Part shown: in pieces, positions 1 to 63,968 of the stretch
Position numbering within the stretch: the first letter of the stretch is position 1
How the letters are laid out: the number at the start of each line of letters is the position of its first letter
Origin: Ranitomeya imitator
Lineage: Eukaryota
DNA: 64,000 bases
Reading direction: 5' to 3'
NCBI RefSeq assembly: GCF_032444005.1
Contig: NC_091291.1
Location: 141,670,001-141,734,000 of the forward strand
Notes under the pieces: generated by a model
Seen by the model: the letters and a program-made list of their open reading frames with translations, nothing else
What the model was told of the DNA's origin: nothing
Database searches by the model: none
Position numbers and translations under genes: made by a program

Positions 1-1095
1 GTTGAGACCGCTTGACCCGAAAGGAGAGTCTGATCGGCCGATCCAGGGAGAAGACCGACCTGTCCCACTGAGACAGAATGGCTTGCTGAAGGGGTCGCGA
101 ATGGAATTGGGCGAAGGGAATCGCTTCCAATGTAGCTACCATCCTCCCCAGAACCTTCATGGCCGAACGGAGGGAGGGAGGTCGAGGACCCTGGAGCAAG
201 CGTATGTCCCGACAGAGAGTGGATCTCTTGTCTGTGGGAAGGAAGACTCTGCTCTGACGAGTATCGAAAAGCATGCCCAGAAAGATGATGCGCTGAGAAG
301 GAATAAGACAGGACTTCTTCCGGTTTACCAGCCACCCGAAATGGGCTAAGGTGTCGAGAACAATGGACAGGCTTTCGTGGGCCTGAGCGAAGGACGGAGC
401 CTTGATGAGGATGTCGTCGAGATATGGAAATAGGACCAGGCCTCTGACTCTCAAGATGGCCATCAGCGCCGCCATGATCTTCGTGAACACTCTTGGCGCG
501 GTTGCGAGACCGAACGGCAGGGCGATGAACTGAAAATGATCTCGTTGCACTGCAAAGCGCAGGAAACGGTGATGTCTGGGAAATATCGGGACATGGAGGT
601 AGGCGTCCTGGATATCTATTGAGCATAGAAACTCCTGAGCCTCCATGGAAGCAATTACTGAACGAAGGGATTCCATCCTGAAGTGTCTCAGGCGAACTCT
701 CCTGTTCAGCAATTTGAGGTCCAGAATGGGGCGAACTTTGCCGTCTTTTCGGTACCACAAAAAGATTCGAGTAGAAACCCGTGAAGCGTTCTTTTTCTGG
801 GACGGGAACGATTACCCCGGATTTGAGCAGAGAAGCGATGGCTGAGAAAAAGCCCGGAACTAGAGCGGGGTCTCTTGGAGGACGGGATTGGAAGAAACGA
901 TCCCGAGGTCGGGAAGCGAACTCTATTTTGTATCCCGAGGATACAACTTCCCTGACCCATGCATCCTCTACTGCGGAAATCCAGACGTCCCTGAAAAGGA
1001 GAAGACGGCCGCCCAATCTGGGAGTTGGGCTGGAGTCTTGCCGAGAGTCATGCCGAGGTGGATCTTCCAGTCCTGGGCCTGGAGGATCTACCCTG
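1..1095 (-). pseudogene. DIRS ORF2 reverse transcriptase (partial, one frameshift near 746-749)
   Basis: Manual translation: RLGGRLLLFRDVW...GFYSNLFVVPK/(fs)/DGKVRPILDLKLLN...IDIQDAYLHVPI...ALPFGLATAPRVFTK...FPYLDDILI (YLDD at 413-424). The frame stays open to base 1 and overlaps the gag 3' end. Confidence 0.9.
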
Positions 1096-2530
1096 GGAGA
1101 AACGAGGACGCCAGGACGGAGTGGGCCTAAAGGACACCGCCTTCTTCTCTTGACGTGCCTGTGGCCTCTGTTGCTGCTGGGAAAAGGAGTTTGACGCAGC
1201 GAAGCGACGAAAAGGCCGAAAAGAACGAAACTGTCGTCTAGGAGGAGGGCGACGAGGCTTAGCCTTGGGGAAAAGAGAACTTGTACCCCCGGTGGCGTCC
1301 TTAATTATTTGGTCCAGCTGGGAACCAAAGAGGCGAGAGCCCTGGAAGGGCAGACTAGTGAGGGACTTTTTGGAGGACAAGTCTGCCTGCCAGGCCTTGA
1401 GCCAAACGGTCCGGCGGATGGCAACGGCATTGCTGGAAGCTTGAGCCGCACAAGACGCGGCATCCAGGGAGGCGGAAACCAGGTATTCACCAGCGTGGGA
1501 AATCTGGTTGGCAAGTTCCGCTAATTGCGCGGGAGGCGCCCCATCCAGGATACCTCGCCGAAGATCCTTGGCCCATTTTGAGATGGATTTTGAAGCCCAA
1601 GTGGACGCAAAAGCTGGACATAGAGCCGCTGAAGCCGCTTCAAAAGCAGATTTCGCGAAGGATTCTATAACTATCGTTAGAATCCTTCAGAGATGCTCCG
1701 CCGGACAGAGGAAGCACCGTGTTGGTGGACAGCCTGGAAACAGGGGGGTCCACCGAGGGAGAGGCCGTCCAATTGGCGGTAAGTTCTGGATGAAAAGGAT
1801 ATAACACACCCAGGCGTTTTCCCCTCTGAAAACGCCTAGTGGGGTTCTCTCTCTCTCTGGACACGATTTCCTCGAATTCAGGATGAGCAGCGAAAAATTT
1901 TGAAGGTGGTTTGGCCCGTCTAAACGAAACCGCCTGATCTGCGGGTTCCGTAGAGGGATCATTGATGCCACATGTTTGGTTTATTGCCCCAATGAGGTTC
2001 TGGACTGTCTCACTCATGGTGGCGATTTGGTTAGGATCCAGCTCCGAAGTATCCTCCGAAGGCGCATCAGATAATGCCTCGCCTGACTCAGGGGAGGAGG
2101 ATCGGTGGGACACCAACCGCGGGGGAGGGCCGAGCGGCGAGATGGAGCGCGAAGAGGACTCAGACCGACGTTCCTGTCTGGACCTTTTGTGGCTTATCAA
2201 GGAGGGCTCGGGCGGCGGTTCCTGCGACCCGCTGGCCTCTGCAGGGGTAACCGATCCAGCGCGGACACTAGGGTTTGAGATACCCGTGTTAAATCGGCCA
2301 CCGATTGTGACAGAGAGGCGGCCCAGCCTGGGATGGGGGGGATCACTCTCGGGCGGAACAGCCGGGGGATCCTGGGCGGTGGGAACAATCGGGTTGCTGC
2401 AGGACTGACACAGCGGTGAGGACTGACCTGAGGGAAGTTTGCTGTTACAGGACGAACATGCAAAGTACGTGACTAAGGCAGAAGATGAAGAGGTAGGGGG
2501 ACGAGAGCGGCCCCCTTTAGAGGTAGACAT
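1048..2530 (-). pseudogene. DIRS ORF1 gag-like protein (one frameshift near 1672)
   Basis: ORF 1640-2530 (N-terminal CxxC...CxxC; VDPPVSRLS...SLKD) continues after a shift as VIESFAKSAFEAASAALCPAFASTW...RRTVWLKAWQAD into ORF 1048-1380, ending RSTSA*. Confidence 0.85.
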
Positions 2531-4794: not shown

Positions 4795-14619
<9,825 letters not shown>

Positions 14620-14783
14620 TTTCACATGTAGGGAAGGGACACACAACACTCAAACACCTGGGAGAAAGGAGAAAAACAGATCTATAACCAGACGGAGTCA
14701 CCCGCACGAGCGCAGAGAACCAGCTACAGCAAAGCCGCGGAATGTCCAACAGCAGCACAGATGACTGAGCGCTCAATGGCGGC

Positions 14784-16310
14784 ACACGCCAGCACCGGCC
14801 GAGGCTGCCATCAGTGCACTGATCACTATCAGCCAGGGGAGAGCAGATACCCAGGTAATGCCGGAAACACGCCAGCACCAGCCGACGCTGCCATCAGTGC
14901 ACTGATCACTATCAGCCAGGGCAGAGCAGGTACCCAGGTAATGCCGGACACACGCCAGCACCAGCCGACGCTGCCATCAGTGCACTGATCACTATCAGCC
15001 AGGGCAGAGCAGGTACCCAGGTAATGCCGGACACACGCCAGCACCAGCCGATGCTGCCATCAGTGCACTGATCACTATAAGCCAGGGCAGAGCAGATACC
15101 CAGGTAATGCCGGACACACGCCAGCACCAGCCGACGCTGCCATCAGTGCACTGATCACTATCAGCCAGGGCAGAGCAGGTACCCAGGTAATGCCGGACAC
15201 ACGCCAGCACCAGCCGATGCTGCCATCAGTGCACTGATCACTATCAGCCAGGGCAGAGCAGATACCCAGGTAATGCCGGACACACGCCAGCACCAGCCGA
15301 TGCTGCCATCAGTGCACTGATCACTATCAGCCAGGGGAGAGCAGATACCCAGGTAATGCCGGAAACACGCCAGCACCAGCCGACGCTGCCATCAGTGCAC
15401 TGATCACTATCAGCCAGGGCAGAGCAGGTACCCAGGTAATGCCGGACACACGCCAGCACCGGCGGATGCACTGATCACTATCAGCCAGGGCAGAGCAGGT
15501 ACCCAGGTAATGCCGGACACACGCCAGCACCAGCCGACGCTGCCATCAGTGCACTGATCACTATCAGCCAGGGCAGAGCAGGTACCCAGGTAATGCCGGA
15601 CACACGCCAGCACCAGCCGATGCTGCCATCAGTGCACTGATCACTATCAGCCAGGGGAGAGCAGATACCCAGGTAATGCCGGAAACACGCCAGCACCGGC
15701 CGAGGCTGCCATCACTGCACTGATCACTATCAGCCAGGGCAGAGCAGGTACCCAGGTAATGCCGGACACACGCCAGCACCGGCCGACGCTGCCATCAGTG
15801 CACTGATCACTATCAGCCAGGGCAGAGCAGGTACCCAGGTAATGCCGGACACACACCAGCACCGGCCGACGCTGCCATCAGTGCACTGATCACTATCAGC
15901 CAGGGCAGAGCAGGTACCCAGGTAATGCCGGACACACACCAGCACCGGCCGACGCTGCCATCAGTGCACTGATCACTATCAGCCAGGGCAGAGCAGGTAC
16001 CCAGGTAATGCCGGACACACGCCAGCACCGGCGGATGCACTGATCACTATCAGCCAGGGCAGAGCAGGTACCCAGGTAATGCCGGACACACACCAGCACC
16101 GGCCGACGCTGCCATCAGTGCACTGATCACTATCAGCCAGGGGAGAGCAGGTACCCAGGTAATGCCGGACACACGCCAGCACCGCCGGATGCACTGATCA
16201 CTATCAGCCAGGGGAGAGCAGGTACCCAGGTAAAGCCGGACAAACGCCAGCACCGGCCGACGCTGCCATCAGTGCACTGATCACAATCAGCCAGGGCAGA
16301 GCAGGTACCC
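14784..16310. repeat. 83-bp minisatellite, ~18 copies (STT3A intron 1)
   Basis: Unit GCACCAGCCGACGCTGCCATCAGTGCACTGATCACTATCAGCCAGGGCAGAGCAGGTACCCAGGTAATGCCGGACACACGCCA; contains the 14-bp palindrome ATCAGTGCACTGAT; ORF-track spacing of 83. Confidence 0.96.
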
Positions 16311-18158
16311 ATACAGGGCACAGTATATAGTGCTGCCTCCTTCATACAGTGCCATCCAATACAGGGCACAGTATATAGTGCTGCCTCCTTCATACAGTGC
16401 CATCCTGTACAGGGCACAGTATATAGTGCTGCCTCCTTCATACAGGACACAGTATATAGTGCTGCCTCCTTCATACAGTGCCATCCCATACAGGGCACAG
16501 TATATAGTGCCTCCTTCTTACAGTGCCATCCCATACAGGACAAAGTATATAGTGCTGCCTCCTTCATACAGTGCCATCCCATACAGGGCACAGTATATAG
16601 TGCTGCTTCCTTCATACAGGACACAGTATATAGTGCTGCCTCCTTCATACAGTGCCATCCCATACAGGACAAAGTATATAGTGCTGCCTCCTTCATACAG
16701 TGCCATCCCGTACAGGACACAGTATATAGTGCTGCCTCCTTCATACAGGGCACAGTATACAGTGCTGCCTCCTTCGTACAGGGCCATCCCACAGGGCACA
16801 GTATATAGTGCTGCCTCCTTCATACAGTGCCATCCCATACAGGGCACAGTATATAGTGCTGCCTCCTTCATACAGTGCCATCCCATACAGGGCACAGTAT
16901 ATAGTGCTGCCTCCTTCATACAGTGCCATCCTGTACAGTATATAGTGCTGCCTCCTTCATACAGTGCCATCCCATACAGGACACAGTATATATTGCTGCC
17001 TCCTTCATACAGGGCACAGTATACAGTGCTGCCTCCTTCATACAGTGCCATCCCATACAGGGCACAGTATATAGTGCTGCCTCCTTCATACAGTGCCATC
17101 CCATACAGGGCACAGTATATAGTGCTGCCTCCTTCATACAGGACACAGTATATAGTGCTGCCTCCTTCATACAGTGCCAACCCATACAGGGCACAGTATA
17201 TAGTGCTGCCTCCTTCATACAGGGCACAGTATATAGTGCTGCCTCCTGCATATAGTGCCATCCCATACAGGGCACAGAATATAGTGCTGCCTCCTTCATA
17301 CAGTGCCATCCCATACAGGACACAGTATATAGTGCTGCCTCCTGCATATAGTGCCATCCCGTACAGGGCACAGAATATAGTGTTGCCTCCTTCGTACAGG
17401 GCCATCCCATACAGGGCACAGTATATAGTGCTGCCTCCAGCATACAGTGCCATCCCATACAGGGCACAGTATATAGTGCTGCCTCCTTCATACAGTGCCA
17501 TCCCATACAGGACACAGTATATAGTGCTGCCTCCTTCATACAGTGCCATCCCATACAGGACACAGTATATAGTGCTGCCTCCTTCATACAGTGCCATCCC
17601 GTACAGGACACAGTATATAGTGCTGCCTCCTTCATACAGTGCCATCCCATACAGGACACAGTATATAGTACTACCTCCTGCATACAGTGCCGTCCCGTAC
17701 AGGGTACAGTATATAGTGCTGCCTCCTGCATACAGGGTACAGTATATAGTGCTGCCTCCTGCATACAGGGTACAGTATATAGTGCTGCCTCCTGCATACA
17801 GGGTACAGTATATAGTGCTGCCTCCTGCATACAGGGTACAGTATATAGTGCTGCCTCCTGCATACAGGGTACAGTATATAGTGCTGCCTCCTGCATACAG
17901 TGCCATCCCGTACAGGACACAGTATATAGTGCTGCCTCCTGCATACAGTGCCATCCCATACAGGGCACAGTATATAGTGATGCCTCCTTCATACAGTGCC
18001 ATCCCGTACAGGACACAGTATATAGTGCTGCCTCCTTCATACAGTGCCATCCCATACAGGGCACAGTATATAGTGATGCCTCCTTCATACAGTGCCATCC
18101 CGTACAGGACACAGTATACAGTGCTGCCTCCTGCATACAGGGTACAGTATATAATGCT

Positions 18159-18366
18159 AAAAAAAAGAAAGAAATGTCCAGCTTCACCGAGTCCGTAAAA
18201 AAGCGATTTCTTTATTAACAAACTTTAAACATGGAGGATACAGACTTCAGCACAACCATATGGGTAAGAATCTCAACGCGTTTCTGGAGACTAAGCTCCC
18301 TTAATCATGACATTCTAAAAGACCCATGTATCCCACTTAAATAACCCTACACCGGAAAGCACACCC
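18159..18366 (-). mobile_element. 208-bp Penelope-like pseudo-LTR / retrozyme-like insert
   Basis: Non-repeat block inside the array, flanked by ATAATGCT/ATAGTGCT (8-bp duplication, 1 mismatch). Minus strand has TATTTAA (18337-18343), a GAAACGCGT hammerhead-type motif, AATAAA (18211-18216) and a T-rich end. Confidence 0.7.
18267..18316 (-). ncRNA. Minimal type-I hammerhead ribozyme-like motif (A3-U8 variant, palindromic stem III)
   Basis: AGAATGTC-ATGATTA-AG-GGAG-CTTAGT-CTCC-A-GAAA-CGCG-TT-GAGATTCT: stem I 7/8 bp, stem II 4 bp, stem III ACGCGT, GUU cleavage triplet. Confidence 0.6.
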
Positions 18367-20866
18367 ATAGTGCTGCCTCCTGCATACAGGGTACAGTATA
18401 TAGTGCTGCCTCCTGCATACAGTGCCATCCCATACAGGGCACAGTATATAGTGCGGCCTCCTTCATACAGTGCCATCCCATACAGGGCACAGTATATAGT
18501 GATGCCTCCTTCATACAGTGCCATCCCATACAGGGCACAGTATATAGTGATGCCTCCTTCATACAGTGCCATCCCATACAGGGCACAGTATATAGTGCTG
18601 CCTCCTTCATACAGTGCCATCCCATACAGGACACAGTATATAGTACTACCTCCTGCATACAGTGCCGTCCCATACAGGACACAGTATACAGTGCTGCCTC
18701 CTGCATACAGGGTACAGTATATAGTGCTGCCTCCTGCATACAGTGCCGTCCCGTACGAGACAGTATATAGTGCTGCCTCCTGCATACAGTGCCATCCCGT
18801 ACAGTATATAGTGCTGCCTCCTGCATACAGTGCCATCCCGTACAGGGCACAGTATATAGTGCTGCCTCCTGCATACAGTGCCATCCCGTACAGTATATAG
18901 TGCTGCCTCCTGCATACAGTGCCATCCCATACAGGGCACAGTATATAGTGCTGCCTCCTTCATATAGTGCCATCCCGTACAGGACACAGTATATAGTGCT
19001 GCCTCCTGCATACAGTGCCATCCCGTACAGTATTTAGTGCTGCCTCCTGCATACAGTGCCATCCCATACAGGACACAGTATACAGTGCTGCCTCCTGCAT
19101 ACAGTGCCGTCCCGTACAGTATATAGTGCTGCCTCCTGCATACAGTGCCATCCCGTACAGGACACAGTATATAGTGCTGCCTCCTTCATACAGTGCCATC
19201 CCATACAGGACACAGTATATAGTGCTGCCTCCTTCATACAGTGCCATCCCGTACAGGACACAGTATACAGTGCTGCCTCCTGCATACAGTGCCATCCCAT
19301 ACAGGGCACAGTATATAGTGCTGCCTCCTGCATACAGTGCCATCCCGTACAGGACACAGTATATAGTGCTGCCTCCTTCATACAGTGCCATCCCATACAG
19401 GACACAGTATATAGTGCTGTCTCCTTCATACAGGGCCATCCCATACAGAACACAGTATATAGTGCTGCCTCCTTCATACAGGGCCATCCCATACAGGGCA
19501 CAGTATTTAGTGCTGCCTCCTGCATACAGTGCCATCCCATACAGGACACAGTGCTGCCTCCTGCATACAGTGCCATCCCGTACAGGACACAGTATATAGT
19601 GCTGCCTCCGTCATACAGTGCCATCCCATACAGGACACAGTATATAGTGCTGTCTCCTTCATACAGGACACAGTATATAGTGCTGCCTCCTTCATACAGG
19701 GCACAGTATATAGTGCTGCCTCCTTCATACAGTGCCATCCCGTACAGGACACAGTATATAGTGCTGCCTCCTTCATACAGGACACCGTATATAGTGCTGC
19801 CTCCTGCATATAGTGCCATCCCGTACAGGACACAGTATATAGTGCTGCCTCCTTCATACAGTGCCATCCCATACAGGACACAGTATATAGTGCTGCCTCC
19901 TTCATACAGTGCCATCCCATAGAGGACACAGTATATAGTGCTGCCTCCTTCATACAGGGCACAGTATATAGTGCTGCCTCCTTCATACAGTGCCATCCCA
20001 TACAGGACACAGTATATAGTGCTGCCTCCTTCATACAGTGCCATCCCATACAGGACACAGTATATAGTGCTGCCTCCTGCATACAGTGCCATCCCATACA
20101 GGACACCGTATATAGTGCTGCCTCCTTCATACAGTGCCATCCCGTACAGGACACAGTATATAGTGCTGCCTCCTGCATACAGTGCCATCCCATACAGGGC
20201 ACAGTATATAGTGCTGCCTCCTGCATACAGTGCCATCCCATACAGGGCACAGTATATAGTGCTGCCTCCTGCATACAGTGCCATCCCATACAGGGCACAG
20301 TATATAGTGCTGCCTCCTGCATACAGTGCCATCCCATACAGGGCACAGTATATATTGCTGCCTCCTGCATACAGTGCCATCCCATACAGGGCACAGTATA
20401 TAGTGCTGCCTCCTGCATACAGTGCCATCCCATACAGGGCACAGTATATAGTGCTGCCTCCTTCATACAGGACACAGTATATAGTGCTGCCTCCTTCATA
20501 CAGGGCCATCCCGTACAGTATATAGTGCTGCCTCCTGCATACAGTGCCATCCCATACAGGGCACAGTATATAGTGCTGCCTCCTTCATACAGGACACAGT
20601 ATATAGTGCTGCCTCCTTCATACAGGGCCATCCCGTACAGTATATAGTGCTGCCTCCTTCATACAGGGCCATCCCGTACAGTATATAGTGCTGCCTCCTG
20701 CATACAGGGCCATCCCGTACAGGACACAGTATATAGTGCTGCCTCCTTCATACAGGACACAGTATATAGTGCTGCCTCCTTCATACAGTGCCATCCCGTA
20801 CAGGGCACATTATAAGGTGCTGCCTCCTGCATACAGGGCCATCCCATACAGGACACAGTATATAGT

Positions 20867-21711
20867 ATAATAGGTCTCCCTCTTGCAAAACTCTCCCCGC
20901 TCCAATCTGTCCTGAATGCTGCAGCCAGGATCATATTCCTCACCAACCGTTACACCGATGCCTCTACCTTGTGCCAGTCATTACACTGGCTACCCATCCA
21001 CTCCAGAATCAAGCACAAAACTACTACCCTCATCCACAAAGCACTCCATGGCTCAGCACCACCCTACATCTCCTCCCTGGTATCAGTCTACCACTCTACC
21101 CGTGCCCTCCGCTCCGCTAATGACCTCAGGTTAGCATCCTCAATAATCAGAACCTCCCACTCCCGTCTCCAAGACTTTACACGTGCTGCGCCGATTCTTT
21201 GGAATGCACTACCTAGGTTAATACGATTAATCCCCAATCCCCACAGTTTTAAGCGTGCCCTAAAAACTCATTTGTTCAGACTGGCCTACCGCCTCAATGC
21301 ATTAACCTAACGATCCCTGTGTGGCCTATTTATAATAAAAAAAAAAAAAAAAAAAAAAAGTTCCTCGCATCATGTTCTCATACACTTTATGCAGTATTAG
21401 CCCTCTGTGTCTGTACTGCTACATACTTAGGCAGGTAACTGGTTCATGCAGCTTTACATGAACACCTGAGCCTTACACTATGGCCGGTCTGAATAACTAA
21501 AGCAATTGTTACCATCCACCTCTCGTGTCTCCCCTTTTCCCCATAGTTTGTAGCTTGCGAGCAGCAGGGCCCTCACTCCTCCTGGTATCTGTTTTGAACT
21601 GTGATTTCTGTTATGCTGTAATGTTTATTGTCTGTACAAGTCCCCTCTATAATTTGTAAAGCGCTGCGGAATATGTTGGCGCTATATAAATAAAATTATT
21701 ATTATTATTAT
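20867..21711 (+). mobile_element. 5'-truncated L2/CR1-clade LINE (ORF2 C-terminus, 3'UTR, (ATT)n tail)
   Basis: IGLPLAKLSPLQSVLNAAARIIF...SLHWLPIHSRIKHK...RAAPILWNALP...FKRALKTHLF*; tail TGTAAAGCGCTGCGG...ATAAATAAA(ATT)n; TATAGT duplicated at 20861-20866 and 21712-21717. Confidence 0.92.
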
Positions 21712-22984
21712 TATAGTGCTGCCTCCTTCATACAGGGCCATCCCGTACAGGACACAGTATATAGTGCTGCCTCCTGCATACAGTGCCATCCCATACAGGG
21801 CACAGTATATAGTGCTGCCTCCTGCATACAGTGCCATCCCATACAGGGCACAGTATATAGTGCTGCCTCCTGCATACAGTGCCATCCCATACAGGGCACA
21901 GTATATAGTGCTGCCTCCTGCATACAGTGCCATCCCATACAGGGCACAGTATATAGTGCTGCCTCCTTCATACAGGACACAGTATATAGTGCTGCCTCCT
22001 TCATACAGGGCCATCCCGTACAGTATATAGTGCTGCCTCCTTCATACAGTGCCATCCCATACAGTATATAGTGCTGCCTCCTTCATACAGTGCCATCCCA
22101 TACAGGACACAGTATATAGTGCTGCCTCCTGCATACAGTGCCATCCCATACAGGACACCGTATATAGTGCTGCCTCCTTCATACAGTGCCATCCCATACA
22201 GGACACAGTATATAGTGCTGCCTCCTGCATACAGTGCCATCCCATACAGGACACAGTATATAGTGCTGCCTCCTGCATACAGTGCCATCCCGTACAGGGC
22301 ACAGTATATAGTGCTGCCTCCTGCATACAGGGCCATCCCATACAGGACACAGTATATAGTGCTGCCTCCTGCATACAGGGCCATCCCATACAGTATATAG
22401 TGCTGCCTCCTTCATACAGGGCCATCCCGTACAGTATATAGTGCTGCCTCCTTCATACAGTGCCATCCCATACAGGACACAGTATATAGTGCTGCCTCCT
22501 GCATACAGTGCCATCCCATACAGGACACCGTATATAGTGCTGCCTCCTTCATACAGTGCCATCCCATACAGGACACAGTATATAGTGCTGCCTCCTGCAT
22601 ACAGTGCCATCCCGTACAGTATATAGTGCTGCCTCCTTCATACAGGGCCATCCCGTACAGGACACAGTATATAGTGCTGCCTCCTTCATACAGGGCACAG
22701 TATATAGTGCTGCCTCCTTCATACAGTGCCATCCCATACAGGGCACAGTATATAGTGCTGCCTCCTTCATACAGGGCACAGTATATAGTGCTGCTTCCGT
22801 CATACAGGACACAGTATATAGTGCTGCCTCCTTCATACAGTGCCATCCCGTACAGGACACAGTATAAGGTGCTGCCTCCTGCATACAGGGCCGTCCCGTA
22901 CAGGACACGACACGTGCAGTGCAGCCCTCACACAGGACGCCGCACCGTACAGTTACGTCTCGCCGCCCGCCGGCCTCATCTCAC

Positions 22985-26029: not shown

Positions 26030-27298
26030 TTACATCGTCCAGTGCTGGTGGCAGAAGGAGTGAACGGGGAATCAGTCAGCGAGCTCGTGCTGCTGATGAA
26101 GTTTGTGTCTTTGAGCTCCTCTCGGTTCATGGCCACATTGACCACTGATCTGAGTGCAGATCACGGAGCGACTCCTGCTCCGCTCACTTCCCTATGGAGG
26201 GACAGGTGACGTCACGTCTACAGGTCTCTGCAGGACACGAGCACAATCACGTCACCTGCTCCTCTCCATACAGAAGTAGTCTGCTGGTCCAGTGGCCAAT
26301 GGTGCCGGAGCCCAGTGAGCCGCCTGCCGACATCTTCTGACTAGTAGGACAGGCACAATATGATGTGTACACCCTGAGCTGTAGCCTCCAGCACCATTGG
26401 TCCCTGGACCGGCATACTGAAAGTATTTTTGCTGAACTCCAGTATCTGCGATCGTCCCATTATCAAAACCCTAAAACAGGAAAATCGATCACCACAGACG
26501 CCTGAGGGCTTGTTCCAGGGACCACGCACCCCCCATATGAGGGGCCACGACCATACACCCCCCCTCAAACGTCACCCGTATTCCTGGCTCCCTGCGTAAT
26601 CCACAGGGAGCGGGCGAGAGATCGGAGCCACGACACCTCAGTCACATAGAAATTGTTCATTTGCTTTTTTTTTTTTTCTTTTTGTAAATCACAAAATGGT
26701 CAAATTCAGACAATATTTTTTTTTTGTTCTTTTGTCCGTAGCTCAATTAGACACAAATAATTAACATCAAGATATTAAAAACAGTAATTAACCCCTTCCA
26801 TCCCTGAGTGATGAAGCGCGAGTGCTTAGTAATTACTGGATACCCAAAACCAAAATAAACATAAAAATAACAATTTAACAATAATATTCACTTTTTCTCC
26901 ATTAATCCTGCCTGGGCCGGCGCCGCGGACTGAACGTCATTGTGAGTCACAATCTGCGCCATTCTGCAGGTCGTTCATCCGGATTTTGGGAACCGTGTAA
27001 CACTGTCATGTGGGGGCACCGGCTGGCTCGGACCGCTGTTGGGGGCCATATTGCTTCTTTGCCGTCGGGTTACATCTCGCAGATTTTCTTACAAACCGTA
27101 TAAAGTGGATGATCCAGATCAGGTCTGCACTCGTTGACGAGCGCACAAGTTTTACAGACGTGCAAAAGTCTCAGGATTGAGGGGAAACGAAAAATCATAA
27201 AGTAAGAAAGTGACACCTTGTGCAGAGGAGCCCGGACACTTGTGCCAGTCAGAAAGAGTTAAAAACATGGCGGTCGCCGGGGACGGACGCTTCTCACA

Positions 27299-39703
<12,405 letters not shown>

Positions 39704-43200: not shown

Positions 43201-46200
43201 ATCTGGGCTGTATACAGGGTGTCGGGGCATGCTGGGGGTTGTAGTTTGGAGATCACTGATCTGGGCTGTATACAGGGTGTCGGGGCATGCTGGGGGTTGT
43301 AGTCTGGAGATCACTGATCGCGGCTGTATACAGGGTGTCGGGGCATGCTGGGGGTTGTAGTTTGGAGATCACTGATCTGGGCTGTATACAGGGTGTCGGG
43401 GCATGCTGGGGGTTGTAGTTTGGTGATCACTGATCTGAGCTGTATACAGGGTGTCGGGGCATGCTGGGGGTTGTAGTTTGGTGATCACTGATCTGTATAC
43501 AGGGTGTCGGGGCATGCTGGGGGTTGTAGTTTGGTGATCACTGATCTGGGCTGTATACAGGGTGTCGGGGCATGCTGGGGGTTGTAGTCTGGAGATCACT
43601 GATCTGGGCTGTATACAGGGTGTCGGGGCATGCTGGGGGTTGTAGTCTGGAGATCACTGATCTGAGCTGTATACAGGGTGTCGGGGCATGCTGGGGGTTG
43701 TAGTCTGGAGATCACTGATCTGGGCTGTATACAGGGTGTCGGGGCATGCTGGGGGTTGTAGTCTGGAGATCACTGATCTGAGCTGTATACAGGGTGTCGG
43801 GGCATGCTGGGGGTTGTAGTTTGGTGATCACTGATCTGAGCTGTATACAGGGTGTCGGGGCATGCTGGGGGTTGTAGTTTGGTGATCACTGATCTGGGCT
43901 GTATACAGGGTGTCGGGGCATGCTGGGGGTTGTAGTTTGGTGATCACTGATCTGAGATATATACAGGGTGTCGGGGCATGCTGGGAGTTGTAGTTTGGTG
44001 ATCACTGATCTGGGCTGTATACAGGGTGTCGGGGCATGCTGGGGGTTGTAGTTTGGTGATCACTGATCTGTATACAGGGTGTCGGGGCATGCTGGGGGTT
44101 GTAGTTTGGAGATCACTGATCTGGGCTGTATACAGGGTGTCGGGGCATGCTGGGGGTTGTAGTTTGGTGATCACTGATCTGGGCTGTATACAGGGTGTCG
44201 GGGCATGCTGGGGGTTGTAGTTTGGAGATCACTGATCTGAGCTGTATACAGGGTGTCGGGGCATGCTGGGGGTTGTAGTTTGGAGATCACTGATCTGGGC
44301 TGTATACAGGGTGTCGGGGCATGCTGGGGGTTGTAGTTTGGTGATCACTGATCTGGGCTGTATACAGGGTGTCGGGGCATGCTGGGGGTTGTAGCTTGGT
44401 GATCACTGATCTGGGCTGTATACAGGGTGTCGGGGCATGCTGGGAGTTGTAGTTTGGTGATCACTGATCTGGGCTGTATACAGGGTGTCGGGGCATGCTG
44501 GGGGTTGTAGTTTGGTGATCACTGATCGGGGCTGTATACAGGGTGTCGGGGCATGCTGGGGGTTGTAGTTTGGAGATCACTGATCTGAGCTGTATACAGG
44601 GTGTCGGGGCATGCTGGGGGTTGTAGTTTGGAGATCACTGATCTGGGCTGTATACAGGGTGTCGGGGCATGCTGGGGGTTGTAGTCTGGAGATCACTGAT
44701 CGCGGCTGTATACAGGGTGTCGGGGCATGCTGGGGGTTGTAGTTTGGAGATCACTGATCTGGGCTGTATACAGGGTGTCGGGGCATGCTGGGGGTTGTAG
44801 TTTGGTGATCACTGATCTGAGCTGTATACAGGGTGTCGGGGCATGCTGGGGGTTGTAGTTTGGTGATCACTGATCTGGGCTGTATACAGGGTGTCGGGGC
44901 ATGCTGGGGGTTGTAGTTTGGTGATCACTGATCTGAGCTGTATACAGGGTGTCGGGGCATGCTGGGGGTTGTAGTTTGGTGATCACTGATCTGGGCTGTA
45001 TACAGGGTGTCGGGGCATGCTGGGGGTTGTAGTTTGGAGATCACTGATCTGGGCTGTATACAGGGTGTCGGGGCATGCTGGGGGTTGTAGTTTGGAGATC
45101 ACTGATCTGAGCTGTATACAGGGTGTCGGGGCATGCTGGGGGTTGTAGTTTGGAGATCACTGATCTGGGCTGTATACAGGGTGTCGGGGCATGCTGGGGG
45201 TTGTAGTTTGGTGATCACTGATCTGAGCTGTATACAGGGTGTCGGGGCATGCTGGGGGTTGTAGTTTGGAGATCACTGATCTGGGCTGTATACAGGGTGT
45301 CGGGGCATGCTGGGGGTTGTAGTTTGGTGATCACTGATCTGGGCTGTATACAGGGTGTCGGGGCATGCTGGGGGTTGTAGTTTGGTGATCACTGATCTGG
45401 GCTGTATACAGGGTGTCGGGGCATGCTGGGGGTTGTAGTTTGGTGATCACTGATCTGAGCTGTATACAGGGTGTCGGGGCATGCTGGGGGTTGTAGTTTG
45501 GAGATCACTGATCTGGGCTGTATACAGGGTGTCGGGGCATGCTGGGGGTTGTAGTTTGGTGATCACTGATCTGGGCTGTATACAGGGTGTCGGGGCATGC
45601 TGGGGGTTGTAGTTTGGTGATCACTGATCTGGGCTGTATACAGGGTGTCGGGGCATGCTGGGGGTTGTAGTTTGGTGATCACTGATCTGAGCTGTATACA
45701 GGGTGTCGGGGCATGCTGGGGGTTGTAGTTTGGAGATCACTGATCTGGGCTGTATACAGGGTGTCGGGGCATGCTGGGGGTTGTAGTTTGGTGATCACTG
45801 ATCTGGGCTGTATACAGGGTGTCGGGGCATGCTGGGGGTTGTAGTTTGGAGATCACTGATCTGGGCTGTATACAGGGTGTCGGGGCATGCTGGGGGTTGT
45901 AGTTTGGTGATCACTGATCTGAGCTGTATACAGGGTGTCGGGGCATGCTGGGGGTTGTAGTTTGGAGATCACTGATCTGGGCTGTATACAGGGTGTCGGG
46001 GCATGCTGGGGGTTGTAGTCTGGAGATCACTGATCTGGACTGTATACAGGGTGTCGGGGCATGCTGGGGGTTGTAGTTTGGTGATCACTGATCTGGGCTG
46101 TATACAGGGTGTCGGGGCATGCTGGGGGTTGTAGTTTGGTGATCACTGATCTGGGCTGTATACAGGGTGTCGGGGCATGCTGGGGGTTGTAGTTTGGTGA

Positions 46201-62455: not shown

Positions 62456-63802
62456 AGGAGCAAGCGACACTACTCTGTCCTCTTCCTGGACCTGTCTTCT
62501 GCCTTCGACACGGTGTACCATTCCCTCCTGTTACAGATTCTCTCCATCTCTTGGCATCACAGACTTGGCCCTATCGTGGATCTCGTCCTATCTAACAGAC
62601 AGAACATTCAGTGTCTCCCTCCCCCACACCACCTCCTCACTTCGCCCCTTGTCCGTCGGTGCTCATCAAGGCTCAGTCCTAGGACCCCTACTCTTCTCCA
62701 TCTACACCTTCGGCCTGGGACAGCTTCTAGAATCCCACGGTATGCAGTACCATCTCTACGCCGATGACACGCAGATCTACCTATCCATTCCTGACCTCAC
62801 CTCCTTACTTGCCAAAATCCCGCACTGTCTGTCTGCTATTTTAGCCTTCTTTTCTGCTCGCTTTCTACAACTGAACATGGACAAAACAGAATTCATCTTT
62901 CCCCCATCTCACTCTACCCCTCCACCAGACCTATCAATCAATGTCAATGGCTGCTCACTTTCCCCAGTCCCACACGCCCGGTGCCTCGGGGTGATCCTCG
63001 ACTCTGCCCTCCCTCTCTTTCAAGCCATATATCCAAGCTCTTGCCTCCTCCTGCCGTTTCAAACTAAAAAATATTTCTCGGATCCGCGCATTCCTTGACC
63101 GCGACACCACAAAAGCACTAGTGCATGCCCTTCTCATCTCCCGCCTCGACTACTGCAACCTCCTCCTCTCTGGCCTCCCCTCTAGCACTCTGGCACCACT
63201 CCAATCCATCCTACACTCTGCTGCCTGACTAATCTTCTTGTCTCCCCGCTATTCCCTGGCCGTTCCCCTATGCCAAGCCCTTCACTGGCTTCCTATTGCC
63301 CAGAGACTCCAGTTCAAAACCCTCACAATGACATACAAAGCCATCCACAACCTGTCTCCTCCATACATCTGTGACATGGTCTCCCGGTACTTACCTACAC
63401 GCAACCTCCGATCCTCACAAGATCTCCTTCTCTACTCCCCTCTCATCTCTTCTTCCCACAACCGCATCCAAGACTTCTCCCGTGCTTCCCCCATACTCTG
63501 GAACTCTCTACCCCAACACATCAGACTCTCGCCTACCATAGAAACCTTCAAAAATAACCTGAAGACCCACCTCTTCCGACAAGCCTACAGCCTGCAGTGA
63601 TCCTGAACTTACTGAACCACCGCACAACCAGCTCTACACTATCCTAGTGTATCCTCACCCATCCCCTGCAGACTGTGAGCCCTCGTGGGCAGGGTCCTCC
63701 CTCCTTATGTACCCGAGTGCCTTGTTTTTTGCTCATGTTTAATGTATTTGTCTATATTTGCCCCGTATTCACATGTAAAGCACCATGGAATAAATGGCGC
63801 TA
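62450..63802 (+). mobile_element. Decayed L2/CR1-clade LINE (RT to 3' end), cut by an assembly gap
   Basis: [33 protein letters not shown] (YADD 62757-62768), LHWLPIAQRLQFK...FKNNLKTHLF; frameshifts and a stop; tail TGTAAAGCACCATGG...GGCGCTA. Confidence 0.92.
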
Positions 63803-63968
63803 NNNNNNNNNNNNNNNNNNNNNNNNNNNNNNNNNNNNNNNNNNNNNNNNNNNNNNNNNNNNNNNNNNNNNNNNNNNNNNNNNNNNNNNNNNNNNNNNNN
63901 NNNNNNNNNNNNNNNNNNNNNNNNNNNNNNNNNNNNNNNNNNNNNNNNNNNNNNNNNNNNNNNNNNNN
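63803..63968. other. Assembly gap (166 N)
   Basis: Run of n. Confidence 0.99.

What the first reader, a model, noticed from the sequence alone, without database searches (positions are those of the whole stretch)
18159..18366. Hammerhead ribozyme motif with a compensatory A3-U8 core, in a Penelope-type insert sense to the STT3A pre-mRNA
Seen: on the minus (transcribed) strand the insert reads AGAAUGUC | A3 U4 G5 A6 U7 U8 A9 | AG GGAG-CUUAGU-CUCC A | G12 A13 A14 A15.1 C GC G U16.1 U17 | GAGAUUCU. Stem I has 7/8 bp, stem II has 4 bp, stem III is the palindrome ACGCGU, and predicted cleavage falls between 18275 and 18274. The only deviations from the CUGANGA/GAAA/UH core are C3>A and G8>U. Established: positions 3 and 8 form a tertiary Watson-Crick pair in the active hammerhead, and Penelope-like elements carry minimal type-I hammerheads with tiny palindromic stem III that cleave as dimers. 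Inference: the double change looks like covariation rather than decay, so this may be a variant ribozyme family in a frog Penelope/retrozyme-like element (TATA-like box, ribozyme, AATAAA in 208 bp). It sits in sense in an essential gene's first intron. Caveats: the 10.1-11.1 pair is missing in this copy (possible C>A decay), and only one copy is present, so cleavage would need trans-dimerisation.
Basis: partly seen in the sequence, partly recalled or inferred. Interest (0 to 1): 0.82.

Follow-up and report, generated by a model that had tools for sequence, protein, structure and literature searches.

The report
Variant hammerhead motif in frog retroelement
A 209-base dead copy of a very abundant frog mobile element carries a hammerhead-ribozyme-like motif whose two unusual core letters (A3 and U8) are the family's normal sequence, but nothing shows that it cuts RNA, here or elsewhere.

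Summary
The motif is present exactly as described, on the minus strand, with the predicted cut between 18275 and 18274. It lies in a 209-bp insertion (18159-18367) with a 7-bp target duplication, inside a 33/48-bp satellite array.

Contigs of public runs show that 18160-18311 is a very high-copy repeat in several frog species. No alternative letter reaches 3% at A3, U8, 10.1 or 11.1. So AUGAUUA is the family consensus, not decay of this copy. The missing 10.1-11.1 pair is family-wide too.

Points against a working ribozyme:
- No Rfam hammerhead model matches, even at E<=10.
- About 98% of copies begin at 18310-18313 and lack the 5' strand of stem I.
- The stems do not vary, so covariation cannot be assessed.
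- This locus has one copy, so no dimer partner.

Points for descent from a true hammerhead:
- Low chance expectation.
- Traits of Penelope minimal hammerheads: an extra base after A9 and a palindromic helix III.
- A 6-bp extension of stem I.
- A Penelope-like layout.
- Breakpoints in other copies within 2 nt of the predicted cut.

Natural U3-A8 cores are published; I found no paper on A3-U8.

The scan noted this motif about 15 times elsewhere in this genome, none followed up. "First intron" is unverified.

The parts
18159..18367 (-). The insertion: a 209-bp, 5'-truncated copy of a repeated non-coding retroelement
   Evidence: Joining the flanks rebuilds a normal satellite unit. Family similarity runs to 18365, after which other copies continue with a conserved sequence (loose ends).
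18152..18158 (.). Target-site duplication, left copy (TAATGCT on the + strand)
18368..18374 (.). Target-site duplication, right copy (TAGTGCT on the + strand; 1 mismatch)
18160..18311 (-). Very high-copy ~152-bp unit of the family, from the catalytic core to the T-rich end
   Evidence: Word depth is 30,000-200,000 in DNA run X1, against about 1,300 for 18312-18365. Flanks are diverse at 18310-18313.
18337..18343 (-). TATA-like box TATTTAA, about 30 nt upstream of the family's common 5' end
   Evidence: Sequence. The boundary is at 18310-18313. The link to a transcription start is inference.
18322..18327 (-). Outer extension of stem I, 5' strand AUGGGU
   Evidence: MFE folds. Chance of a 6-bp helix there is about 0.024.
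18309..18316 (-). Stem I, 5' strand AGAAUGUC; mostly outside the abundant unit
   Evidence: depth step
18302..18308 (-). Core A3 U4 G5 A6 U7 U8 A9 (canonical CUGANGA)
   Evidence: No alternative letter at 3% or more at 18308 or 18303.
18285..18301 (-). Helix II region: extra A (18301), G10.1 (18300) opposite A11.1 (18285), 4-bp GGAG/CUCC stem, loop CUUAGU
   Evidence: The only common variant is loop U18294>C at 23%.
18282..18284 (-). G12 A13 A14
18276..18281 (-). Minimal helix III: palindrome A15.1-CGCG-U16.1, which can pair only between two molecules
   Evidence: G18277>A occurs in about 4% of depth, a CpG transition.
18274..18275 (-). Predicted cleavage site, between U17 (18275) and G1.1 (18274)
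   Evidence: Follows from the hammerhead numbering. Other copies have structural breakpoints at 18273 and 18276. Cleavage itself is not shown.
18267..18274 (-). Stem I, 3' strand GAGAUUCU
18260..18265 (-). Outer extension of stem I, 3' strand ACCCAU
18211..18216 (-). AATAAA, about 50 nt before the element's end
18159..18178 (-). T-rich 3' end GACATTTCTTTCTTTTTTTT, abutting the target duplication; no poly(A) tail

Best explanation
This is a dead, 5'-truncated 209-bp retrocopy of a very abundant, non-coding retroelement family of poison frogs. Its layout resembles the terminal repeat (pLTR) of a Penelope-like element or a solo 'retrozyme': TATA-type promoter, then a hammerhead-type motif, then about 115 nt to a fixed 3' end.

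The motif most likely descends from a true Penelope-type minimal hammerhead. In this family the C3-G8 core pair has been replaced by A3-U8, and C11.1 by A. Both changes are the family consensus.

Proposed mechanism (inferred, not shown):
1. Long transcripts that read through a complete terminal repeat contain the whole motif: stem I of 7/8 bp plus a 6-bp extension, stem II, and the palindrome ACGCGU. They could cut only by pairing two motifs through the palindrome.
2. Most genomic copies, about 98%, start 2-5 nt before A3. That point is about 30 nt downstream of the TATA box, probably the RNA's 5' end. These copies cannot form stem I.

If the motif is active at all, activity is probably weak. 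At this locus the single copy has no partner, and there is no sign that it acts on STT3A RNA.
For: - Motif and coordinates are confirmed.
- Chance expectation is 0.0025 per 64 kb, with a further factor of about 0.024 for the outer helix.
- The insertion has a 7-bp duplication and the empty site can be rebuilt.
- Family data: 18160-18311 has a depth of 30,000-200,000 in run X1 and is also present in X12, X6 and RNA run X11. Depth drops about 50-fold at 18311/18312, with diverse flanks there. The rarer long form continues beyond 18365 with a conserved sequence. No variant reaches 3% at 18308, 18303, 18301 or 18285.
- Breakpoints in other copies lie at 18273 (8 contigs) and 18276 (1 contig), within 2 nt of the predicted cut.
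- Penelope minimal hammerheads typically have an extra nucleotide between 9 and 10.1 and a palindromic helix III. A U3-A8 covariant core occurs in about 1,300 Schistosoma motifs (PMC4209133).
- Natural U3-A8 cores occur in several hammerhead ribozymes, and 3-8 covariants were earlier shown active in vitro (PMC3088659).
- In the Anolis Penelope element the hammerhead cut site lies about 85-92 nt upstream of the internal reverse-transcription start, and the C3G/G8C double mutant keeps part of the activity (PMC11167929).
- The Penelope promoter lies in the terminal repeat (PMC6765202).
Against: - No Rfam hammerhead model matches, even at E<=10 on 321 bases.
- G10.1.A11.1 replaces the most conserved stem pair. 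Only a U.U mismatch is reported as a natural variant (PMC3088659).
- No stem position varies, so there is no covariation. The motif region has fewer variable sites than the rest, 2/45 against 13/107, but this is not significant (p=0.23).
- Copy depth does not step up at the predicted cut site.
- RNA-run depth mirrors DNA copy number, a ratio of about 64 against about 51, so there is no sign of specific expression.
- No Penelope ORF is in the window, and I could not fetch any other copy of the element.
- The link to Penelope elements therefore rests on layout, plus unchecked scan notes.
Confidence: 0.55

Rival explanations
1. An active variant ribozyme family. The A3-U8 hammerhead cleaves as a dimer in long or tandem transcripts of the element, and this processing is part of the element's life cycle. 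The A-U pair would be a selected compensatory replacement of C3-G8.
For: - A3-U8 is fixed family-wide and both changes are transversions.
- If three random changes hit 15 conserved positions, the chance that two of them hit 3 and 8 and stay Watson-Crick is about 1% (my arithmetic).
- Breakpoints in other copies lie within 2 nt of the predicted cut.
- Stem I has a 6-bp extension with an internal loop, as in extended type I hammerheads.
- Natural U3-A8 cores occur, and other 3-8 exchanges keep activity in vitro.
- A scan note reports another A3:U8 core (AUGAGUA) elsewhere in this genome (unchecked).
Against: - The G10.1.A11.1 mismatch is family-wide.
- Stem I is missing in about 98% of copies.
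- There is no covariation and no Rfam hit.
- Contigs cannot show RNA ends.
- Penelope minimal hammerheads are barely active in vitro even when canonical (PMC4209133), and in Anolis cleavage is not needed for insertion (PMC11167929).
Confidence: 0.3
2. A chance look-alike. The element is an ordinary short retroposon, for example SINE-like with an RNA start at about 18311, whose sequence happens to resemble a hammerhead with two core mismatches. It was noticed repeatedly only because the family is so abundant.
For: - Under the looser descriptor, chance gives 0.0375 hits per 64 kb. Several repeat consensus sequences in a multi-gigabase genome could therefore match by accident.
- Two invariant core positions and the 10.1-11.1 pair are not met, and Rfam models are silent.
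- The abundant unit starts after the stem I 5' strand.
- The stem II hairpin resembles a tRNA A box (GAGCTTAGT), and a weak B-box-like GGTTGTG lies about 55 nt from the start (read from the sequence; weak).
Against: - The tailored descriptor gives 0.0025 per 64 kb, with a further factor of 0.024 for the outer helix.
- Traits specific to Penelope minimal hammerheads are present.
- The layout matches a Penelope terminal repeat.
- Breakpoints lie at the predicted cut.
- ARAGORN finds nothing tRNA-like.
- An internal T6 run would stop Pol III before the element's end.
Confidence: 0.15

Closest known systems
Minimal type I hammerheads of Penelope-like elements (Cervera & de la Pena 2014, PMC4209133)
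   Same: - Type I topology.
- An extra nucleotide between A9 and 10.1.
- A tiny palindromic helix III that needs a dimer.
- Position in a terminal repeat near the element's 3' end.
- Dispersed, mostly single, 5'-truncated copies.
- A covariant 3-8 pair (U3-A8) is already known in Schistosoma Cercyon elements.
   Different: - The pair here is A3-U8, for which I found no published natural example.
- G10.1-C11.1, described as highly conserved in these motifs, is G.A here.
- No RT/GIY-YIG ORF could be linked to the element.
Animal non-LTR retrozymes (Cervera & de la Pena 2020, PMC7229834; Li et al. 2026 preprint, 10.64898/2026.07.22.740005)
   Same: - A small non-coding element with a type I hammerhead-type motif, related to Penelope terminal repeats.
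- Solo monomers are common.
- Frogs are rich in them. Scan notes report canonical 353- and 384-bp retrozymes in this same genome.
   Different: - No tandem arrangement here, and no head-to-tail joints among the laid contigs.
- The abundant unit is only about 152 bp and lacks a complete stem I.
- The core is non-canonical.
Natural U3-A8 hammerhead core variants (Perreault et al. 2011, PMC3088659)
   Same: A Watson-Crick replacement of the tertiary C3-G8 pair with all other core nucleotides kept.
   Different: - The orientation of the pair is reversed: purine at 3, pyrimidine at 8.
- It is combined with a mismatch at 10.1-11.1.
- Activity is untested.

Membership tests
Hammerhead ribozyme (type I) | Conserved core C3 U4 G5 A6 N7 G8 A9 / G12 A13 A14 / A15.1-U16.1 / H17 | tested here: not met
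   11 of 13 positions match. C3 is A and G8 is U. This is the family consensus, not decay.
Hammerhead ribozyme (type I) | Positions 3 and 8 able to form a Watson-Crick pair (covariation accepted in natural U3-A8 variants) | tested here: met
   A3-U8. Precedent for U3-A8 is in PMC3088659 and PMC4209133.
Hammerhead ribozyme (type I) | G10.1-C11.1 pair opening helix II | tested here: not met
   G18300 lies opposite A18285. No variant reaches 3% in the family.
Hammerhead ribozyme (type I) | Helices I and II formed | tested here: inconclusive
   This copy has stem I at 7/8 bp plus a 6-bp extension, and stem II at 4 bp. About 98% of family copies begin at 18310-18313 and lack the stem I 5' strand.
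Hammerhead ribozyme (type I) | Match to a curated covariance model (Rfam Hammerhead families) | tested here: not met
   No hammerhead hit at gathering score or at E<=10.
Hammerhead ribozyme (type I) | Compensatory changes in the stems across relatives | tested here: inconclusive
   No stem position varies at 3% or more. The only variants are a loop II U>C and a CpG transition in helix III.
Hammerhead ribozyme (type I) | Site-specific self-cleavage after H17 | not testable with these tools
   Contigs carry no RNA-end information. Only breakpoints near the site in other copies were seen.
Penelope-type minimal hammerhead | Extra nucleotide between 9 and 10.1, and palindromic 15.2-16.2 / loop 3 | tested here: met
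   A18301, and ACGCGU at 18281-18276. Criteria are from PMC4209133.
Penelope-like element (pLTR) / non-autonomous derivative | Associated ORF with RT and GIY-YIG endonuclease | tested here: not met
   None in the window. The two RT fragments are LINE-like (62565-63098) and DIRS-like (2-811). The full-length element could not be fetched.
Penelope-like element (pLTR) / non-autonomous derivative | 5'-truncated insertion with target duplication, no poly(A) tail, hammerhead about 100 nt from the 3' end, promoter in the repeat | tested here: met
   Layout compared with PMC11167929 and PMC8557442. This is agreement of layout only.
Non-LTR retrozyme | Tandem head-to-tail units, each with a complete hammerhead | tested here: not met
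   There is a single copy in the window, and no head-to-tail joint among the contigs.

The most novel reading that the evidence does not exclude
AUGAUUA...GAAA is a naturally active hammerhead core in which A3-U8 replaces C3-G8. It would be fixed in a family of roughly ten thousand copies shared by several poison-frog species, and it would tolerate a G.A mismatch at 10.1-11.1. That would add a further natural state of the 3-8 tertiary pair beyond C-G and the published U-A.
Probability: 0.3. Interest if true: 0.6.

Novelty: new variant of a known kind. Interest (0 to 1): 0.4.

Why it matters
The C3-G8 pair was the key prediction of the full-length hammerhead structure. So far only U3-A8 is documented as a natural replacement. 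A fixed A3-U8 core in a huge, young retroelement family would be a natural experiment on how much the catalytic core tolerates. It would also show that standard descriptors and Rfam models miss a whole class of motifs in amphibian genomes. For this locus nothing follows: it is one inert, truncated copy upstream of the STT3A coding exons.

Tried and rejected
- Rfam at gathering score, and at E<=10 on the region and on the whole window: no hammerhead.
- Other copies in the window: none.
- Exact-pattern scans of metagenome and viral contigs: none.
- Exact look-up of the 37-aa ORF across the insert: not on record.
- Penelope ORF as a seed for fetching frog loci: the window has none.
- tRNA-like origin: ARAGORN is negative.
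- The loose end at 18254 looked like a junction. It is an alignment offset caused by the 1-nt insertion at 18253.
- Lunse et al. 2017 and Przybilski & Hammann 2007 are not held, so I could not check whether A3-U8 was tested or listed there.
- Conservation of the motif against the rest of the unit: not significant.
- MITE reading: the inverted repeat AGAATGTC/GACATTTCT is not terminal, so I rejected it.

Full report
**1. Observation**

- AGAAUGUC, 18316-18309
- AUGAUUA, 18308-18302
- A, 18301
- G, 18300
- GGAG-CUUAGU-CUCC, 18299-18286
- A, 18285
- GAA, 18284-18282
- ACGCGU, 18281-18276
- U, 18275
- GAGAUUCU, 18274-18267

A descriptor I wrote accepts any Watson-Crick pair at 3-8, up to 2 unpaired bases 5' of helix II and 1 unpaired base 3' of it, a palindromic helix III, and stem I of at least 7/8 bp. 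It finds this site and nothing else in the window. No canonical CUGANGA hammerhead is present.

In 400 dinucleotide-preserving shuffles this descriptor gives 0.0025 hits per window. A looser one (any 3-8, stem I at least 6/8) gives 0.0375. Folding shows a further 6-bp helix, AUGGGU 18327-18322 with ACCCAU 18265-18260, that extends stem I across an internal loop. The chance of that is about 0.024.

No Rfam hammerhead family matches, either at gathering score or at E<=10 on 321 bases or on the whole window.

**2. What carries it**

The motif lies in a 209-bp insertion, 18159-18367, inside a 33/48-bp satellite array that runs from 16311 to beyond 22000. Joining the flanks rebuilds a normal satellite unit. 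The insertion is bounded by a 7-bp duplication, TAATGCT/TAGTGCT on the + strand.

In the sense of the motif, the insert carries in order:
- a TATA-like box, 18343-18337
- the motif
- AATAAA, 18216-18211
- a T-rich end that abuts the duplication, with no poly(A) tail

There is no second copy in the window.

*Abundance.* Positions 18160-18311 have a summed word depth of 30,000-200,000 in DNA run X1. They are also present in DNA runs of other organisms (X12, and one identical 129-nt piece in X6) and in an RNA-labelled run (X11). Contigs that reach into unique flanks have a depth of about 10. The unit therefore has very roughly ten thousand copies (inference).

*Short and long forms.* Depth falls about 50-fold at 18311/18312, and the loose ends at 18310, 18311 and 18313 have diverse continuations. 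Most copies therefore begin 2-5 nt before A3 and lack the 5' strand of stem I. That point is about 30 nt downstream of the TATA box, so it is probably the 5' end of the RNA (inference). The rarer long form, at a depth of about 1,300, continues beyond 18365 with a conserved sequence. This window's copy is thus a 5'-truncated piece of the long form. In X6 and X12 the T-rich end is followed by one and the same sequence, as expected if the unit also stands at the 5' end of a longer element.

*Variation.* No alternative letter reaches 3% of depth at A3 (18308), U8 (18303), the extra A (18301), G10.1 (18300) or A11.1 (18285). The only variants in the motif are loop II U18294>C (23%) and G18277>A (4%, a CpG transition). 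This has three consequences:
- AUGAUUA is the family consensus.
- The missing 10.1-11.1 pair is also consensus, not decay of this copy.
- No stem varies, so covariation cannot be assessed.

The motif region has fewer variable sites than the rest of the unit (2/45 against 13/107), but not significantly (p=0.23).

*Breakpoints.* Two kinds of rearranged copy break close to the predicted cut. Eight contigs share 18311-18273 and then diverge. One contig joins 18276 to 18188. Both breaks lie within 2 nt of 18275|18274. This is suggestive, but the numbers are small.

*Expression.* RNA-run depth mirrors DNA copy number, with short/long ratios of about 64 and about 51. There is no sign of specific expression, and contigs cannot show RNA ends.

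**4. Comparison with what is known**

Cervera & de la Pena (PMC4209133) describe minimal hammerheads in the terminal repeats of Penelope-like elements. Their traits, compared with this motif:
- A nucleotide between 9 and 10.1: present here.
- Palindromic 15.2-16.2 / loop 3: present here.
- A highly conserved G10.1-C11.1: absent here.
- Very low activity in vitro, even as dimers.
- A U3-A8 covariant core in about 1,300 Schistosoma motifs.

Perreault et al. (PMC3088659) report natural U3-A8 cores. They note that 3-8 covariants were already known to be active in vitro. They also report that stem II can open with a U.U mismatch, the best tolerated mispair.

In the Anolis Penelope element (PMC11167929):
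- The cut site lies 26 nt into the ORF, and reverse transcription starts internally at 111-118 nt. That is 85-92 nt downstream of the cut; here the distance to the element's end is 115 nt.
- The C3G/G8C double mutant keeps part of the activity.
- Ribozyme mutants still insert.
- No RNA ends were seen at the cut site.

Full-text searches found no paper on a natural A3-U8 hammerhead. Two relevant papers are not held.

**5. Reading**

The layout, the Penelope-specific traits and the low chance expectation make descent from a true Penelope-type hammerhead the best reading (about 0.8 including the active rival). [quoted passage not shown] A chance look-alike in a SINE-like element stays at about 0.15. 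The looser descriptor would hit several repeat families in a genome of this size, and the repeated sightings by the scan reflect copy number, not independent evidence.

**6. Gene context**

STT3A coding exons lie on the minus strand from about 14.6 kb ([14 protein letters not shown]...) down to about 5.7 kb. The insert is 3.6 kb 5' of the ATG exon, on the same strand. It is in 'intron 1' only if a non-coding first exon lies further upstream. A region resembling a CpG island at 27-29 kb makes that plausible, but I could not test it.

**7. Earlier notes of the scan**

About 15 first-reader notes report an 'A3-U8 hammerhead' elsewhere in this genome. One places it in a Penelope pseudo-LTR, and one reports a different core, AUGAGUA. 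None was followed up. Follow-ups on other windows describe canonical 353/384-bp retrozymes in the same genome, some with junctions at the cut site. I used these notes as leads only.

Noticed in passing
window 16311-22000+: A long array of a 33/48-bp satellite (consensus CATACAGGGCACAGTATATAGTGCTGCCTCCTTCATACAGTGCCATCC) hosts the insertion. It gives long spurious ORFs in several frames.
   Followed up: partly
window 15000-16311: About 16 copies of an 83-bp GC-rich tandem repeat lie just 5' of the STT3A start-codon exon. The unit contains CAGGTAAT, which resembles a splice donor.
   Followed up: no
window 5700-14650 (-): The STT3A coding exons, from the start codon exon (about 14.5-14.6 kb, [14 protein letters not shown]) to the C-terminal exon (about 5.7-5.9 kb). 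Pfam STT3 matches lie at 13611-13832 and 10856-11452.
   Followed up: partly
window 2-1686 (-): A retroelement fragment with an RVT_1 reverse transcriptase (2-811) and a LAP2alpha-like domain (1051-1686). I recall this pairing from DIRS-type elements; it does not look like a Penelope element.
   Followed up: partly
window 62565-63600 (+): A LINE-type reverse transcriptase fragment (RVT_1, YADDTQIY motif), followed by an assembly gap at 63803-63968.
   Followed up: partly
window 29150-29997 (-): A Tc1/mariner-type transposase remnant (HTH_Tnp_Tc3_2, weak DDE_3).
   Followed up: partly
window about 45200-50250: A long tandem array with a 58-bp period, which gives repeated 57-aa ORFs (SPNYNPQHAPTPCIQPRSVI...).
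   Followed up: no
window 53052-53148: A palindromic hairpin scoring 53 bits against the plant family MIR4239, below its gathering score of 100, and matching on both strands. It looks like an inverted-repeat (MITE-like) hairpin.
   Followed up: no
window 27000-29000: The strongest region resembling a CpG island upstream of STT3A (GC 0.62-0.64, CpG o/e about 1.0-1.1). It may hold the promoter and a non-coding exon 1.
   Followed up: no
run X6 record 25: A contig from a differently labelled organism is 100% identical to window 18160-18288 over 129 nt. The family is either very young or shared by closely related species.
   Followed up: no
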